In this document: positions 1,221 to 55,960 of the stretch, one piece after another
Layout of the letters: each line of letters begins with the position of its first letter
Position numbering within the stretch: the first letter of the stretch is position 1
Source: Octopus sinensis
Taxonomy: Eukaryota
Assembly (NCBI RefSeq): GCF_006345805.1
Contig: NC_043003.1
Coordinates: 101,432,001 to 101,496,000, forward strand
Direction of reading: 5' to 3'
Length of the DNA: 64,000 nt
Notes under the pieces: model-generated
Database searches by the model: none
What the model was told of the DNA's origin: nothing
The model's input: only the letters and a program-made list of their open reading frames with translations
Position numbers and translations under genes: made by a program

Positions 1221-1765
1221 TTGCTCGGGTTTGTAAGGGAAATAACTATATAAGCATTTTTAGAGAGTTATAGCCAAAAATTAGCAAAAAATGCATTAAA
1301 AATGGAAAAAATATGATGGTAAATTATTTTTTAAATCGTTGACTCATTGTAGACATTTCTTAGAGAGTTACTTATCTTATATAATAGCGAAAAAATGCAT
1401 TAAAATGGAAAAAAACGATGGTAAATTCTTTTTAAATCGTAGATTTATGTAAACGTTTTCTTAAACGTTTATGTAAACGTTTTCAAGCCATGAAGTTGCA
1501 GTTCTAAAAAAACGCTGGTCTCCTTGACAACGCATTACGACGTTGATTTCCTTCCCCACAGGTGCAGGTGTGAGCGTTGACGCCAACTCCGCCGCCATCG
1601 ACACACGAAAAATTATGCGTAGACGCGCGCTAATAGACGCGCTAATATGAATCACGACTATAAGCTACCCGAATTTGGTTAAACTGCACCGCAAAATGTG
1701 GGAGTAGTTGGAATCTAAATCGAAGGGGACAGACACTCACACAACTACAGTTTTATATATATAGA
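1221..1765 (-). mobile_element. Non-autonomous Helitron (3' end clipped)
   Basis: Minus strand begins TCTATATATATAAAACTGTAGTTGTGTG, a Helitron-type TC start. The other end (1221-1400) matches 11355-11515, which carries an intact hairpin and CTAG. Confidence 0.65.
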
Positions 1766-1789
1766 TATACATAGCGCAGTAGTGGTGAG

Positions 1790-2050
1790 ATGTGACAGCA
1801 AAGAAAAGCCTACATTCACTCTCTGCATGCAATTAGACTCGGAAAGTTCGTGAGGAACCCATTGACCCAATTTGCTGACTTTTCCGATAGCACACAGGTC
1901 TCAATGAATGCTAGTTCCTCAACAGTTACGATGAGATTTTGTTCCACCAGGGATTTCAGGCTGTCCTTGTCGAGTTCTACAGATCTTTTAGGATGAGGCT
2001 CGTCTTGTAGGCTGTTCCAATATAGCTTTGAAAAAAATAGTTGTTAAAAT
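1790..2050 (-). mobile_element. mariner transposase fragment
   Basis: Minus-strand translation contains GKVSKLGQWVPHELSESNCMQRVNV, with the mariner WVPHEL motif at ~1845-1862. Frameshifted. Confidence 0.75.
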
Positions 2051-3158
2051 CGAAATGCCCTCTTGAAAACTTGCACTCTGAATAAGTAAAAGATAAAATT
2101 ACTACCTGCTTTTATAGCAAGTTAATATAAGTAGTTTATCCCATTCCCCTCTGATATTTAGTTCAAGCTGTACTCTTAAAAATGTTAGGTAAATTGTAAT
2201 TGAAGAAATTCTATATTGTAGATTTGTATAACTCCCAATGGGAGGCAGATAAAATCTGCCTTTTATAATGAGAGATATAAAATCGAAAAATGAAAATCTA
2301 TATATGTACGAAAATCTATGTTTGTATAAAAATCTTTGTATGCAAATCCATGTAAATATAAAATTCCTCTTTAGAAAATCTGTTTTGAATATTTATGCAT
2401 GAAAATATATGAATGAAAATCCATATATGAAAATCTATGAATATATAAAAATCTATATAGAAAAATTTATGTACGCAGATAAATATATATAAATCTGTCT
2501 GAAAATCAATATATTTATGGAGACCTTTGTTTGAAAATACGTATGAAAATGTATAAATGAAAATCTATGTACAAAAAATCTTTATATAAAAATCTTTATA
2601 GGAAAATCTATGTATTAAAATCTATGGATGAAAATCTGTGTATCAAATATATGTATAATATATGTTTCTGTGTAAAATCTATGCATTAAAATCTATGAAT
2701 GTATGAAAATCCATGTACGATAAGTTGCTTATGAATATCTATATACTTATGAAAAATTTATGTAGTAAAATATGTATGAAAATCTGTTTCAAATTCTGGA
2801 AAGGCGTAAGGAAGTTCCCTGAAGCACATGAAGAAGAAATTCTATAGCGTTCCTCAATAGCGTTGAGACGGCGAGAGAAGAAAGGACGTGGGATCAGCTC
2901 ATTCCCCTGTCCCAAACGTAGATTTCGAACATACATTTTCATATAAAGATTTTCATACACACATATTTTTACACATGAATGGATTTTCGAACAATCATAG
3001 ATTTTCATACATAGATTTTCATACACAAATTTTATACATACATAGATTTTCAAATATACACTGAGTTTTGTACGAAAATGGATTTTTTTTATATGTAGAT
3101 TTTCATACAAAGCTTTTCATATAAACATGGATTTCCTTATATACATAACTCTACGTAA

Positions 3159-4330
3159 CTATGGTAATCTTTGTAGTGACTTCTTCTTGGGTGAGTTGTA
3201 TCCAATGATGGGTGGCTTCTTCGAAGGAATCTATCCAGACTGTTTAAAGTTGATGGGATCCTTTTCTTCTTTGACATTTCTCAGGACAAGTGTAAATATA
3301 TGTTGTGATCTTCAATGTGGCAGGGGACAAGTCCGTGGTCCAAGTCTCGGATGGACCTTGAAGCTAAATCGTTTGGGTAAAGTAGGATGTATATTTTCCA
3401 CATCGTACAAATGATGTACCGCTCACGGCGATGCTGGAGGCGTTCGTGACTTTTGCTGCGTTTGAGTGGACTGGATTAAGTATTAAATACTTAATCCACT
3501 GTAAAACTTTTCCACGGATTCCAACATTTGCTAATTTCGAGAGTAGGTCTACACTGTCGAACGCTTTACTGACGTCAGAGTTCGATCCTGTTCCCAAGGC
3601 TTTGAGTACATCTTTAATGTGGTGTAAGAACTGTGTTAGATAGTCCCTGCGACAGCGAAAGCCATGCTGATTTCAATTTAGGAGTTTGTGGGTCTCGAGG
3701 ATGTGAGCTATCCTTGATCTTAACAATCTTTCAAACACTTTAATGATGTGGGAGGTGAGTGAGATTGGGTGATAGTTGACTGCGAGGGATCTGTTTCCCT
3801 TTTTGAAAACCGGGATGACCGACTGGGATAGAAACTGTTTCGGTATATAACCTGCGTCTAACGAGGTTGGTCAGAGGGACTGCAAATTGATAGCTACATT
3901 CCTTCAGGAGTCTAGCGGGAAATCTAGCAGAGTAATGTTTGATCTCATTTATTGCTGCTACGATGTCGGTGGCAGTGAAGGTTATGTCTGCGATTTTGTG
4001 TTAGGAGTCAACTTCTTTCGTTTCCTTCACGTCAATATTAGTGGAACACTGAAGACAGAGCAGTATTGTTTCTGCAGTATTTCTGCCATTTCTTTAGCAT
4101 CGTATTGGGGAAAGCCGTTATCATCAATCAAAGGCCCAATGAATTAGACAGTGGTTCTATGCTTATTTGCACAAGTATAGAACATTTTTGGGTTCTGTTT
4201 GATGTTTTTGATTACCCCAGCACTTTGATTTTCAATGTAGGTTTTCCGAGGTTTTCAGCTCTAGTGTTTTCATTGTTGTTCAATGTGCATGTTGTGTGTG
4301 TGAATATTTTAATTGGTTGGCGCCTGATGA
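3159..4330 (-). mobile_element. CR1/L2-group LINE ORF2 (RT and C-terminus) remnant, copy 1
   Basis: Minus-strand pieces DVSKAFDSVD..LLSKLANVGIRGKVLQWIK, HGFRCRRDYLTQ and C-terminal PIIGYNSPKKKSL. Disrupted. Confidence 0.8.
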
Positions 4331-49556: not shown

Positions 49557-50209
49557 GTATCCTTTTTACAGAATGTCACTTAACTACACATTTTACATAC
49601 ATGTTTCAATGACAGGGACTTTGTATTGGCTTTATTTTTTTTATAGTAATTATGAGAGACCTTTCTTAATGCTAATAACTCAGCTGCAAGGCAAAAATAC
49701 AATTTGTCTATTATCTAAGACTGAAGCAAGCTGTGTTACTTGACCAAAGGCACAATACTGTGACTTTGGTAGTATTTGAATTAACAATGTAGTGATTAGT
49801 AAATTATTCAGTTACTTAATCTTATGAGTACAGCTGGTCCTTTATTCTGGATTCTATAGTATTATACTAACGTGAAATGAACAGCCACTGGATATAACAT
49901 CAGTTCATTACAGATTATATTCTTCAGGTGATAGTGTATCAATGCCTTTATAACTAAGTAGGCTGAGATATATATAATAAGCAATCTTGCATTTAAATTG
50001 CAGTAAAATGCCTGAAGTGGATATGAATTCACAACACAAAAGATGTCAGATTTTGAAGCAGATAAAGTATGAAACATATGCATGAAAGTAAAAATGTGGG
50101 GAGGGTGAGGTGTGTAAATCAAATATGTTTTAACTGGGTTCCTTTCTTGCTTTTTTTCTCCTTTTAATGTGTCTATAAAAATTAAAGTATCACCTTAACA
50201 AGGGCTCAG
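49557..50209 (+). other. U12-type (minor spliceosome) GT-AG intron, 653 nt
   Basis: 5' site GTATCCTTT (49557-49565) matches the U12 consensus RTATCCTT. Branch site CCTTAAC at 50193-50199, 10 nt before the intron end. No polypyrimidine tract. Splicing restores the frame (TT+A = Leu). Confidence 0.9.
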
Positions 50210-51690: not shown

Positions 51691-52769
51691 TATATATATG
51701 TGTGTATATGCTGGTGTTTGGGTACCCCTGTAACTTAGTGGTTCAGCAAAAGAGACTGATAGAATAAGTATCAAGCTTTTAAAAAATAAGTACTGGGGTT
51801 AATTCATCTGACTAAAATTCTTCAAGGCTGTGCTCCTAGCATGGCCATGTCTAATGGCTGAAACAAATAAAGGATATAAGAAATCAAGTAAATTTTGGGG
51901 TTTCTTAGCTTCATCTATTTGGCATAGGGGTAGGTTATGTTTTACAGTTTTCATTGGTCCAATCACTGGAAACAGAGGAGTAGACTCATTAGAAATAAGT
52001 GTAATGCACAAAATATTCTATTAATTGCTATCATCATAGTTTTAAATATCCACTTTTCCATAGTTCAGATGGAATCTGTTGATTTTCTGTGGTTGGGCAT
52101 TCTTCCTGTCACCAACCATCACCTGTTTTCAAGCAAAGTACTATTTCCCTATAGCCAGGCATCTTTTCACAGATAATCATCATTATCATCACCATTTAAC
52201 ATACGTTTTCCATACTGATATGAGCCAGTCAGCCTGAGGAATGTGCCATGCTCCAATGTTTACTTTGGCATAATTTCTACAGCTGGATGACCTTCCTGAC
52301 ACCAACCAATTCATAGAGTGCAAGACAGGCACTAGTGAGGTCAAAAAGTAACTTGCAAGACAAGATTCCTTGATTGGGTGGAGTGTAATATTAAGGGAGG
52401 TGGCTTTATGCCAGGTATTCAAAGGTTAAAATATAATAGAGGGACAGAAACAAGTGTCTTCTTGTAGAGGAGATATATCGCTACCCCAGTTGGCAAAGGA
52501 GAGAAGATGGTGAAGAGGTGTTATAGTGAACCCTTAAGTTACAGTTAAGTGACCTGTGGGGACACTGTATTTCATTATGCGACCATAATATACTACAAAA
52601 TATAAATGCTTTTATAAGTCAGCACTGTGATGGCAGTGCTATTACATCACGTGTTAATGTTATATTTACAAATTTTCTCATTATTGTGTACGTTTGGCAT
52701 ACTTGGATATGAAATGTCATAACAAAATCAGTGCTGGCTATAATTTATATTGAGTTTGTGGTTGGTTAA

Positions 52770-55349
52770 CCCTTTCATTACTATATTTCTGACCAAAAAA
52801 CACCCCTCATGAGTTTCAATTAAATTCTAAAATAATCATGAATTTAGACTAGTTTCATTAAACAACTCTAACTTTTTTACTTATCAACATATTTATGTGA
52901 TATTTGGAACAGAAGGGTTCTTAATCAATTCCATTGCATAATTTTTGTCTCAAAGTGACTCTAATTACAGGTAAATCCAGGTAAACTGAGCAAAAGGTAA
53001 AAATATCAAAATTTTGTTTAAACATTACCATAGAAAATAAGTCCTCAGCTAATATTTAATTGAGGTATGCAACAAAATTTTGATATAGAAGAATTGTGCA
53101 CATCACTAGATTATCAGTTGAATTTAATGCACAGAAGAACAGGTGTACCATAAAGTTAAAATAAACTAAAATACTGGAATTTGTTTTTTAAGAAAACTAG
53201 AAAATTAAATACAACTGAATGAAATTCATGTATGTGTGTGAACACATACATGAATACACAGGAACATATATAATAAAGATTTACAATAGAAATTAAATCA
53301 AAACTTGTCACTCACCTTACAGGCAAATTAAAATAAAAAGTTAAAACTAAGTAAATTTGAAAAATATTTATACAATCTAATTATACATATATACAAACAA
53401 TATTTACATTATATTTCTATCATGGAAAGTTGTAAAACATCCCACTCTACATACTGCAACCTTGCAGAATGCACATTGGAAGGACGTTTCAACTGGCCGT
53501 CCACTGGGAGTTTTTCTTTGTTGATGTAGACATTCATGGCACTGCCTTTTGCGACCCGATTTTTTCTAATTTATGTAGATCGGCTGAACTCAGAGGAATA
53601 TCTCTCTGGCAGGTTTTGCTTTTCCTTCCTGCAGTTATTTTTTTTTTTTTTTTGAGGAATATCCTGCCCTCAACTGCATTGCTACATCTGCCCGGAACTG
53701 CAGATGGTCGCACCACTTGCGAACCCCTCCTGATTTGGTATATAATATAAATGCATTTACAATGCTCATGTTTACTATATACCAAACCAGGTATCGCCAC
53801 CATTTATTACCCGGTCTACCAACCGGATAATAACTCCTCATCTGGTTCAGCCGATCCACACCGCCCATGTACCTGTTATAATCAAGGTTCACAAACAGAG
53901 TGCCATTTTCATCTACACATGGTTGTGCACTGGTAGATAGAAAATTTATCTGCCTCTTATCTCTGTATGCGGTCGCTAGCAGATTTCCTTTCTGCCGTTG
54001 GATTATTTCACCTCTTTTTTTTTAATTTTGCTTTTTTTATATCCAACGGCAGCCCCTTTCTATTAGCAATTACTGTAGAACACGTATATGTTGCCACAGC
54101 TTCTAAATCCTCCGCAAGTTTGACCGAACTAAAAAATTGGTCAAAACATAATATTCGGCCCTGGTTATGGTATGGAAGAGATAAATTCCAGACCACATCG
54201 TACCCTAGGCCGTGCTGACTAACATTATTGTCTCTTTTCCCTGTATAGAAGCTAAATCCACAGCAGTACCCAGTATTTGCTTCACATATTTTCCAAACTT
54301 TGATCCCCCATTTTGTGGGCTTTCCTGGCATATACTGTTGAAAACGTACTCGGCCTTTATAGCCCACCATACCCTTATCGACGAATAAATACCTTCCAGG
54401 GTTGTAAAATATTTTGTAGGCATTTTGAACACCATCAATGAGGGGTCTTATTTTAAATAAGGGATCAAAGTTTGGTTCTCCACATACGGGGGTACTGCTA
54501 GTGTCTCTTATGTGTAAATATTGATTTAGTTTTATAAATCTTATTCTGGTCATTATATTGGAAACATATTCATCGCCAAAAGGTTCCTGTTTGCTCCAGT
54601 AATTTGTAATTCTGGGCAACTGCCTTATGCCCATAATAATATTTATAGCAAAAAATGCCCGCATTTCGTCTATGGTTGTTGGGTACCACAAGCTATCTTT
54701 TTTTTCGAGCTTGTTTACTTTCTGCATAATGATTCGTCTCCACAGTTATTGCTTCAAACAAGCATGCTGGAAATAATTTTAAAAAAAAAGTCTATTGGTC
54801 TCGCTTCCTGAGAAAGACTATGGGTAGACCCTGTCTCCTCAGAAAAATCGTTAATAGACACTTTTTTTAAATTATTACTCCATTCTGGTGTAAAATTATC
54901 CTTGTTGTCTGTATCGCTGCTTTCAGTTTCTGATGAATCACTTTCAGTTTCAGAATCGCTTTCGGATTCTGAAATATCTGATTCAAATTCATCCACGACG
55001 TGCTTTTCTGCTTCATCCATTCTTCTCCTCGAAATCTCCATATCTTCTATTGAAAAACCTTCAAATTCGGAGTCACTGCTTGATAGTATAAAACTCCTCT
55101 CCATTTTGAAAGTTGAAAAAAATTACCGTTGATAAAAATGTGGAAAAAAATCTTCCAAAATAGCATGCCAAACAATGTCGGATACAATAACTCAACTGTT
55201 AGCAAAGTGAAATCACATGTTTTAACGAGCGTACCAACGAGATTTGGGTTCAAATTTACATTTAAATAACAATAGCTTCTCTCGGCCGGGTTAGTAACAT
55301 GAACCAAAAAATTTTTCGGCTAGGTACAGCCGGGTTAGTAACGAAAGGG
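52770..55349 (-). mobile_element. Full-length piggyBac transposon (2580 bp)
   Basis: TTAA TSDs at 52766-69 and 55350-53. 13-bp TIRs CCCTTTCATTACT / revcomp CCCTTTCGTTACT. Subterminal direct repeat GCCGGGTTAGTAAC at ~55284 and ~55329. Confidence 0.95.
53404..55104 (-). pseudogene. piggyBac (PGBD4-like) transposase, ~565 aa, with 5 apparent frameshifts
   Basis: Acidic N-terminus, catalytic motifs FVDKGMV / CFDQFFSS / GGVDRLNQ, and C-terminal Cys-rich RKRQCHECL..QCAFCKVAVCRVGCFTTFH then TAA. Confidence 0.9.
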
Positions 55350-55519
55350 TTAATGGGTTGGATGGGTGCTGGTGAAGGAGCAAAAACTCCTGAAATATGG
55401 TATATACACTCATTACTCATTTTTCATCTTTGATCTCATTATTGTTTGCATTTGGTGTACTTGGATACCAAACATCATAACAAAATCTGTGCTGACTTCA
55501 ATTTCTATAGAAAATCTGT

Positions 55520-55960
55520 AGAGATAACCTTAGCAATAAGGTGAATATAAGAGAAGTGGTCCAGAGGATTGGACAGGATGAATGGGTTGGTAAGTTTGCA
55601 AGAGTGAGAGAAGAGTGGTGGATGAATAGAGCTGGGGATAGAGGTGAATGCAGTGAAGGGGAACATGAGTGGAGGTGTGATAAATGGTGAATATCAGTCT
55701 GGAGAAAGACAAAGGAAATAGGATTGAGACAGTGAAGTGGCAGCACAGGTGATGTGGAGTTTGAGCAGTGTGTGAAAGATGCTCAATGACAGGGATGAGG
55801 TCAGAAGTACATAGATGTAGAAATACTGGGAGACAAACATGTGTAGTGGGGAGCTGTCATTGGCAGAATGAAAGAGTATGAAGGGGCCATCCAGCAGAAA
55901 ATGAGATGGTAAGAGATGATACTGAGAAGGTGAGAACCAAAATAAGTGACTCATGGGAGC
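55520..55960 (-). mobile_element. Possible old CR1/L2 3'-end remnant
   Basis: Minus strand has a pyrimidine-rich stretch with AATSLSQSYF, loosely like the CR1/L2 C-terminal VASLSLFY motif. Weak. Confidence 0.35.

What the first reader, a model, noticed from the sequence alone, without database searches (positions are those of the whole stretch)
52766..55353. Full-length piggyBac whose transposase is broken only at homopolymer runs, possibly intact and active
Seen: perfect TTAA TSDs, 13-bp TIRs, the three catalytic Asp motifs and a complete Cys-rich C-terminus. Manual reconstruction finds no nonsense codons. The five frame breaks can each be placed in a homopolymer: T4A9 54777-89, T8 54698-705, T9 54015-23, T16 53638-53 and T6 53560-65. 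Removing one base at four sites and adjusting T16 gives one ORF of ~565 aa. Inference: these are long-read indel errors left unpolished in a multicopy repeat, or slippage in a very young copy. Either way the family is a candidate active cephalopod piggyBac and a potential transgenesis tool.
Basis: partly seen in the sequence, partly recalled or inferred. Interest (0 to 1): 0.75.

Follow-up and report, generated by a model that had tools for sequence, protein, structure and literature searches.

The report
Old, dead octopus piggyBac transposon copy
This is a complete-looking but dead and fairly old copy of an octopus piggyBac "jumping gene": its reading-frame breaks look like real slippage mutations, not sequencing errors, so it is an ordinary transposon fossil.

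Summary
The element spans 52766-55353 with its transposase on the minus strand. It has TTAA duplications, a 14-bp terminal inverted repeat with one mismatch, a DDE_Tnp_1_7 core with all three Asp, and the Cys-rich tail. Its six frame pieces tile a 563-aa oyster homologue end to end without a stop.

Four of the five frame breaks are A/T-run expansions: +1, +1, +1 and +8. The fifth is misplaced. T6 has the family length, and the lesion is a 2-bp loss in the adjacent C-run at 53555-57.

"Possibly intact, very young, unpolished errors" is not supported.
- The nearest genomic copies are 91-93% identical.
- The copy's own branch is about 2.5-2.9%, roughly 7-8 My.
- It carries three private 8-15-bp indels outside homopolymers, a CpG change in one TIR and 28 private amino-acid changes, including Glu-to-Lys beside the first catalytic Asp.
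- Its indel-to-substitution ratio (0.12) is the family median.
- An independent run reproduces the extra base at 54698-705 exactly.

Only part of the family-level idea survives. Two other insertions, L004 and L012, are 99.4% identical with different flanks. L004 has a ~580-codon frame with a single stop. No uninterrupted copy was found.

The parts
52766..52769 (.). TTAA target-site duplication at the transposase 3' end
   Evidence: Read directly. Empty-site paralogues of the host repeat have a single TTAA.
52770..52783 (-). 3'-end terminal inverted repeat, CCCTTTCATTACTA. The A at 52777 is a private CpG-type change from the family G.
   Evidence: Inverted repeat I4 is 94% complementary. Most other copies carry G here.
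52784..53403 (-). 3' untranslated and subterminal region. It carries a private 9-bp deletion near 52912, a 1-bp deletion near 53335 and an 8-bp insertion near 53241 that creates a 14-nt palindrome. The part up to about 53120 is shared with a very high-copy non-autonomous derivative.
   Evidence: private indels; I14; depth about 4700 times single copy at 52768-52884.
53404..53554 (-). ORF piece F with the stop codon at 53404-06: the Cys-rich C-terminal domain (zf-Tnp_2)
   Evidence: Pfam PF13842, 1.6e-5. Aligns to oyster homologue residues 511-562.
53555..53557 (-). Frame break 5: C3 here against C5 in the family, a 2-bp loss.
   Evidence: Copy alignment. Paralogue contigs carry "CC put in behind 53554".
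53559..53637 (-). ORF piece E: linker between the catalytic core and the Cys-rich domain
   Evidence: Frame 2. Aligns to homologue residues 481-516.
53638..53653 (-). Frame break 4: T16 on the plus strand against 8 in nearly all other copies (+8)
   Evidence: Contigs are cut here, so reads could not test it.
53654..54014 (-). ORF piece D: C-terminal part of DDE_Tnp_1_7, with the third catalytic Asp (GGVD, codon 53856-53854)
   Evidence: Pfam 2.7e-11. piggyBat and T. ni alignment.
54015..54023 (-). Frame break 3: T9 on the plus strand against 8 in most copies (+1)
54024..54697 (-). ORF piece C: main part of DDE_Tnp_1_7. It holds Asp1 (codon 54379-54377, followed by the private Glu-to-Lys at 54376-74) and Asp2 (54142-54140, flanked by the private Phe-to-Cys and Arg-to-Gln).
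   Evidence: Pfam 3e-60. piggyBat 9c0f 7e-25..
54698..54705 (-). Frame break 2: T8 on the plus strand against 7 in 16 of the 17 other copies aligned there, 6 in L007 (+1). Confirmed in an independent run.
   Evidence: X3 record 21 spans 54675-54772 with 0 differences and 0 gaps. The stretch is unique in the genome.
54706..54776 (-). ORF piece B
   Evidence: Frame 1. Aligns to homologue residues 106-130.
54777..54789 (-). Frame break 1: T4A9 low-complexity stretch, one base longer than in most copies. The region also varies among copies.
54790..55104 (-). ORF piece A: acidic, Ser-rich N-terminus starting at the ATG at 55104
   Evidence: Aligns to homologue residues 6-111.
55105..55335 (-). 5' untranslated and subterminal region. 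It has a private 15-bp deletion near 55162 and a 14-nt subterminal direct repeat (55285-98 and 55329-42).
   Evidence: D10.
55336..55349 (-). 5'-end terminal inverted repeat in the family state
55350..55353 (.). TTAA target-site duplication at the transposase 5' end
52540..52765 (.). Left half of the high-copy host repeat into which the element inserted
   Evidence: depth.
55354..55600 (.). Right half of the host repeat
   Evidence: depth.

Best explanation
This is a structurally full-length but inactivated copy of an octopus piggyBac (PGBD4-like) cut-and-paste transposon. It inserted at a TTAA inside another repeat, about 2.6 kb downstream of a NOL11 exon and antisense to that gene. It has since decayed neutrally for a few million years. 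The five frame breaks are real germline mutations from replication slippage in mononucleotide runs: four A/T-run expansions and one 2-bp C/G-run contraction. They accumulated alongside about 40 substitutions and several larger indels. The copy cannot make transposase. At most it could be a passive substrate, and one of its TIRs is also mutated.

Shown: the anatomy, the divergence, the indel pattern, and one break confirmed in independent data.
Inferred: that the other four breaks are equally real, and the age in years.
For: - Nearest paralogues are 91-93% identical, and 88% at protein level.
- The terminal branch is 0.025.
- There are 42 private substitutions in 482 codons, 28 of them non-synonymous. 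These include Glu-to-Lys beside Asp1, where nearly all other copies and piggyBat have Asp-Glu.
- There are 8 private indels. Three of them (15, 9 and 8 bp) lie outside homopolymers and cannot be homopolymer miscalls.
- One TIR carries a CpG-type change.
- The indel-to-substitution ratio is 0.12, which is the median of 21 copies, and indel density correlates with branch length.
- The T8 run is reproduced exactly by a single-copy-depth contig of another organism label and study. That stretch is unique in the genome.
- L004 and L012 show 0 gaps over 1654 bp spanning three of the same runs, so the assembly is not homopolymer-noisy here.
- Having zero stops is unremarkable: P is 0.12-0.19 for 42 random substitutions.
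- With the published octopus calibration of JC 0.09 for about 25 My (PMC13282606), a branch of 0.025-0.029 gives roughly 7-8 My.
Against: - Only one of the five runs could be checked against independent reads. The contigs served were about 100 nt and break in repeats, and T16 was skipped outright.
- pN/pS on the private branch is 0.52 (binomial p 0.039 against a naive neutral split). Part of that branch may therefore predate insertion, and the post-insertion age may be smaller than 2.5%.
- Only the best 40-150 of 1300-3900 first-look candidates were scored, so a closer copy could in principle have been missed.
Confidence: 0.85

Rival explanations
1. The frame breaks are assembly artefacts, long-read homopolymer miscalls that were never polished. 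On this reading the real locus encodes an uninterrupted transposase of about 565 aa.
For: All five breaks lie in mononucleotide or low-complexity runs, and there is no stop codon. Four of the five could not be tested with the contigs served.
Against: - The testable run is confirmed in independent data.
- A +8 expansion and a 2-bp loss are not typical single-base miscalls.
- The same runs are assembled in frame in L004 and L002, and identically in the twins L004 and L012.
- The indel load matches the copy's substitution age.
- Even with all five breaks removed, the copy would still carry 28 private amino-acid changes and a TIR change.
Confidence: 0.06
2. The copy is broken, but its transposase is still made by transcriptional or ribosomal slippage on the long A-runs, as in some bacterial IS elements.
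For: Four breaks lie in runs of 8-16 A in the mRNA sense.
Against: The other copies have the in-frame run lengths, so the frameshifted state is private and not a conserved design. Five independent corrections per molecule would be needed. No such mechanism is known for piggyBac, to my knowledge.
Confidence: 0.01
3. The copy is dead, but it is still mobilised in trans by a living transposase of the same family.
For: Both termini and the TTAA are present. The family spawned very high-copy non-autonomous derivatives. One sublineage moved at about 0.6% divergence.
Against: One TIR carries a substitution. No uninterrupted transposase frame was found among the scored copies. Pieces specific to this copy were found in all four runs laid, with no clean empty-site joint.
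Confidence: 0.08

Closest known systems
piggyBac superfamily transposons: T. ni piggyBac (PDB 6X67/6X68) and Myotis piggyBat (PDB 9C0F)
   Same: TTAA target duplication. CCC...GGG terminal inverted repeats of 13-14 bp with a subterminal repeat. A single ORF of about 565 aa with an acidic N-terminus, a DDE_Tnp_1_7 core with three Asp, and a C-terminal Cys-rich domain.
   Different: The core is distantly related to both, by phmmer only (7e-25 and 1.4e-21). This copy has five frameshifts and a TIR mutation, so it is not autonomous.
"piggyBac transposable element-derived protein 4-like" proteins of bivalves, such as the 563-aa Ostrea edulis protein P0003
   Same: These are the closest proteins found. 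They are 60-61% identical to the family's longest ORF over its whole length and collinear with all six pieces of this copy.
   Different: They come from a different mollusc class and are uninterrupted. Whether they are transposon copies or host genes was not examined.
Octopus vulgaris piggyBac families listed as "recently active" (6 families, 474 insertions at 2% or less from consensus; PMC13282606)
   Same: Same superfamily and same genus-level host. The listing shows that young piggyBac insertions in octopus are already on record.
   Different: This copy exceeds that 2% criterion on its own branch (0.025-0.029). Whether its family is one of the six could not be checked, because no sequences were available here.

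Membership tests
piggyBac superfamily (element) | TTAA target-site duplication | tested here: met
   TTAA at both ends. Host-repeat paralogues have a single TTAA at the same point.
piggyBac superfamily (element) | Short terminal inverted repeats beginning CCC and ending GGG | tested here: met
   14-bp TIR with 13 of 14 bases matching here. It is perfect in sister copies.
piggyBac superfamily (element) | DDE_Tnp_1_7 transposase core with three catalytic Asp | tested here: met
   PF13843 at 3e-60 and 2.7e-11. The Asp residues align to the piggyBat and T. ni structures. Numbering of the catalytic residues is from memory of the T. ni structure paper.
piggyBac superfamily (element) | C-terminal Cys-rich DNA-binding domain | tested here: met
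   PF13842 at 25.8 bits against a cut-off of 24. Aligns to homologue residues 511-562.
Autonomous (potentially active) piggyBac copy | Uninterrupted transposase reading frame | tested here: not met
   Five frame breaks. One is confirmed in independent data.
Autonomous (potentially active) piggyBac copy | Both TIRs in the family state | tested here: not met
   G-to-A at 52777 in the 3'-end TIR.
Autonomous (potentially active) piggyBac copy | Excision and integration activity | not testable with these tools
   Needs a bench assay.
Recently active insertion in the sense of PMC13282606 (2% or less from consensus, 90% or more of full length) | 2% or less divergence | tested here: not met
   Terminal branch 0.025. 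42 of about 1446 coding sites differ from the sister-group majority, or 2.9%. The length criterion is met.

The most novel reading that the evidence does not exclude
The sublineage represented by L004 (C10:71630734-71633325) and L012 (C4:74775741-74777392) is still alive in the species. The two copies are 99.4% identical with different flanks. One has a ~580-codon frame with a single stop, and the other carries a sense codon at that position. If an uninterrupted master copy segregates in octopus populations, it would be a naturally active cephalopod piggyBac.
Probability: 0.2. Interest if true: 0.5.

Novelty: new member of a known kind. Interest (0 to 1): 0.15.

Why it matters
As it stands, very little: this is one more decayed DNA-transposon copy in a repeat-rich octopus genome.

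The practical lesson concerns method. Frameshifts placed only in homopolymers are not by themselves a sign of assembly error. Slippage is also the main natural source of indels, and the substitution age and non-homopolymer indels of the same copy decide the matter.

The family-level lead has modest applied interest. A 2026 preprint on transgenic cuttlefish reports that moth piggyBac gave no expression while Minos and Sleeping Beauty worked (10.64898/2026.09.23.753964). A native cephalopod piggyBac would therefore be a reasonable thing to test, though it is not an urgent gap.

Tried and rejected
- **Read laying:** it served only short Logan contigs of about 100 nt that break at repeats. Only the T8 run could be judged, T16 was skipped, and no contig bridged a flank-element junction. 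Presence/absence polymorphism therefore could not be assessed. The listed "joints" across the element have 20-28-nt sides and come from other copies of the host repeat.
- **The look-up of encoding contigs:** I had meant to look for the exact 239-aa ORF bounded by two of the frameshifts in other assemblies.
- **PF08168 (NOL11_N) search of the genome:** found nothing. I could not establish whether the element is intronic or lies beyond the end of NOL11.
- **Earlier-findings search by sequence:** blank.
- **Large protein search:** it returned no octopus protein of this family; the best hit was 61%, from bivalves. I do not read this as absence of intact copies, because transposon ORFs of animal genomes are mostly not in that collection.
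- **Programmed or transcriptional slippage:** rejected because the out-of-frame run lengths are private to this copy.
Majority states were used only inside scripts to count differences.

Full report
**What is there**

The stretch 52766-55353 is a 2588-bp element bounded by TTAA on both sides. Inside the TTAAs lie 14-bp inverted termini. The transposase 5' end (55336-49) carries the family state, reverse complement CCCTTTCGTTACTA. The 3' end (52770-83) reads CCCTTTCATTACTA, with one mismatch at 52777.

The coding strand is the minus strand. Three-frame translation gives six open pieces that follow one another in the frame order 0, 1, 2, 0, 2, 0.
- Pfam places DDE_Tnp_1_7 on pieces C and D (3e-60 and 2.7e-11).
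- Pfam places the piggyBac zinc-finger domain zf-Tnp_2 on piece F (1.6e-5, above the curated cut-off).
- phmmer against solved structures finds piggyBat (9C0F, 7e-25) and T. ni piggyBac (6X67, 1.4e-21). The alignments show the three acidic positions conserved: VD(K)G, FD(Q)FF and GGVD.
- The six pieces tile a 563-aa Ostrea edulis "PGBD4-like" protein from residue 6 to 562 without a missing segment.
- The 545 codons counted contain no stop.

**The target site**

Both flanks belong to another high-copy repeat (depth). Uninterrupted copies of that repeat (L044, L049, L052) read straight through the junction with a single TTAA, so the TTAA pair is a genuine duplication made on insertion.

The U12-type intron of NOL11 noted earlier (s1-112879) begins with GTATCC at 49557 on the plus strand. 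The element therefore lies about 2.6 kb downstream of it and is antisense. I could not establish whether it sits in an intron.

**Where the frame breaks are**

I aligned this copy with 20 other genomic copies of at least 82% identity.

| Site | This copy | Other copies | Change |
|---|---|---|---|
| 54777-89 (T-rich, low complexity) | one base longer | shorter in most; region itself variable | +1 |
| 54698-705 | run of 8 | 7 in 16 of the 17 other copies aligned there, 6 in L007 | +1 |
| 54015-23 | run of 9 | 8 in most | +1 |
| 53638-53 | run of 16 | 8 | +8 |
| 53555-57 (C-run) | C3 | C5 | -2 |

The real lesion is the loss of two bases from the adjacent C-run, which paralogue contigs also show as "CC put in behind 53554". 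The net change is +9, which is why the first and last pieces share a frame.

**Are the breaks assembly errors?**

Five lines of evidence say no.
1. The 98 nt from 54675 to 54772, which span the run of 8, are reproduced with no difference and no gap by a contig at single-copy depth. The contig is X3 record 21 at depth 7.3, against flank contigs at 5.4-8.8. The run has a different organism label, sample and study from the likely source run. That 98-nt stretch is unique in the genome. The next best match is 93% and one base shorter.
2. The copy has eight private indels. Three are a 15-bp deletion near 55162, a 9-bp deletion near 52912 and an 8-bp insertion near 53241. All three lie in ordinary sequence, so they cannot be homopolymer miscalls.
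3. Across 21 copies, private indel density rises with terminal branch length (Spearman 0.57, p 0.007). This copy's ratio of indel events to substitutions, 0.12, is exactly the median.
4. The same runs are assembled in frame in L004 and L002. The near-twins L004 and L012 show no gap at all over 1654 bp that include three of the runs. The assembly is not visibly noisy at these homopolymers.
5. A +8 expansion is not a typical single-base miscall.

The other four runs could not be tested directly. The served contigs are about 100 nt long and stop at repeat branch points, and the T16 region was skipped.

**Is it young?**

No.
- The best other copies are 91-93% identical including gaps and 4.5-6.6% different in substitutions. 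At protein level the best is 88%.
- The terminal branch is 0.025.
- Against the majority state of its nine closest relatives, the ORF has 42 private substitutions in 482 codons: 14 synonymous and 28 non-synonymous.
- The non-synonymous changes include Glu-to-Lys directly after the first catalytic Asp, where nearly every other copy and piggyBat keep Asp-Glu. They also include changes on both sides of the second Asp, and Leu-to-Pro, Arg-to-Trp, Arg-to-Cys and Pro-to-Leu.
- pN/pS is 0.52, somewhat below a naive neutral split (p 0.039). Part of this branch probably belongs to the still-selected master lineage before insertion, so the post-insertion age is at most about 2.5-2.9%.
- With the calibration used for Octopus vulgaris repeats (JC 0.09 for about 25 My, PMC13282606), that is on the order of 7-8 My at most.
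- The absence of stop codons is not informative. About 1.6-2.1 are expected from 42 random substitutions, so zero has a probability of 0.12-0.19.

**The family**

The family was very successful.
- Depth over the 3' terminal 120-350 bp, over 54055-54405 and over 55225-55341 is hundreds to thousands of times single copy.
- These three peaks coincide with the segments of a deletion derivative seen next to copies in L026 and L006. The terminal 355 bp alone has many copies at 91-95%.
- Most transposase-bearing copies are heavily decayed, with many CGA-to-TGA stops.
- Two copies stand out. L002 has a 449-aa ORF with one frameshift in the same T-rich stretch.
- L004 has a frame of about 580 codons interrupted by a single TAA.
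- L004 and the 5'-truncated L012 are 99.4% identical over 1654 bp. Their similarity stops exactly at the element end, so they are separate insertions made recently. L012 has a sense codon where L004 has the stop.

This is the only support for a possibly still-active family. No uninterrupted copy was among the 94-150 scored candidates, and only a fraction of the first-look candidates was scored.

**Comparison with what is known**

The element meets every structural criterion of the piggyBac superfamily. It fails the two criteria for an autonomous copy that could be tested here: an open frame and intact TIRs.
- Its nearest protein relatives are bivalve "PGBD4-like" proteins at 60-61% identity, followed by shark proteins at about 47%.
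- Young piggyBac insertions in octopus are already reported: 6 families and 474 insertions at 2% or less divergence in O. vulgaris (PMC13282606). I could not check whether this family is among them.
- For the tool idea, a 2026 preprint on transgenic cuttlefish found that moth piggyBac gave no expression while Minos and Sleeping Beauty worked (10.64898/2026.09.23.753964). A native piggyBac would be of some use but would not be a breakthrough.
- The genome is 2,719,151,902 bp in 13,516 contigs. From memory these figures fit the Octopus sinensis assembly, but I did not test that.

**Verdict**

This is a real, complete-looking piggyBac copy that is dead and a few million years old. Its frame breaks are best read as natural slippage mutations. 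It is ordinary. The one lead worth keeping is the young L004/L012 sublineage.

Noticed in passing
L004:1501-4092 (G000:C10:71630734-71633325) and L012:1501-3154 (G000:C4:74775741-74777392): Two insertions of a sister sublineage are 99.4% identical over 1654 bp with no gaps, and their similarity ends exactly at the element terminus. L004 has a ~580-codon frame with a single TAA. L012 has a sense codon at that position but is cut off after 1654 bp. These are the youngest members seen.
   Followed up: partly
window 52768-53118, 54055-54405 and 55225-55341; L026:390-1504; L006:3818-4952: Contig depth at these three segments is hundreds to thousands of times single copy. They match the parts kept by a deletion derivative of the element (about 1-355, 1341-1574 and 1946-2588 of the plus-strand element). 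This points to a very high-copy non-autonomous offspring family.
   Followed up: partly
L026:1480-1530: Two piggyBac-type elements abut and share one TTAA at 1501-1504, terminus against terminus. This resembles the TTAA-linked arrays that earlier notes describe elsewhere in this genome.
   Followed up: no
G000:C2:97066339-97067688; also C2:155537148-155538050 and C26:20374647-20375468: Other piggyBac lineages (56-58% identical) have long uninterrupted frames of 493, 428 and 417 aa. They could be intact transposases of other families or domesticated PGBD-like genes.
   Followed up: no
Proteins P0001-P0009: The closest proteins to this cephalopod family are bivalve proteins (oyster, scallop, pearl oyster) and unnamed metagenome proteins at 53-61% identity over the full length. 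This may reflect slow evolution or horizontal transfer among marine molluscs.
   Followed up: no
window 53224-53255: The private 8-bp insertion creates a perfect 14-nt palindrome (53224-37 against 53242-55) that the other copies lack. It looks like a small templated, inverted-copy repair event.
   Followed up: no
window 52540-52765 and 55354-55600: The host repeat around the element is itself high-copy. Its halves match each other and other loci in both orientations, as in a hairpin or MITE-like element. It may be the hAT-type MITE of the earlier notes, but this was not tested.
   Followed up: partly
Runs X9 and X11-X16: Several small runs guessed to be RNA hold 24-32% of the sampled words of 52300-55800.
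   Followed up: no
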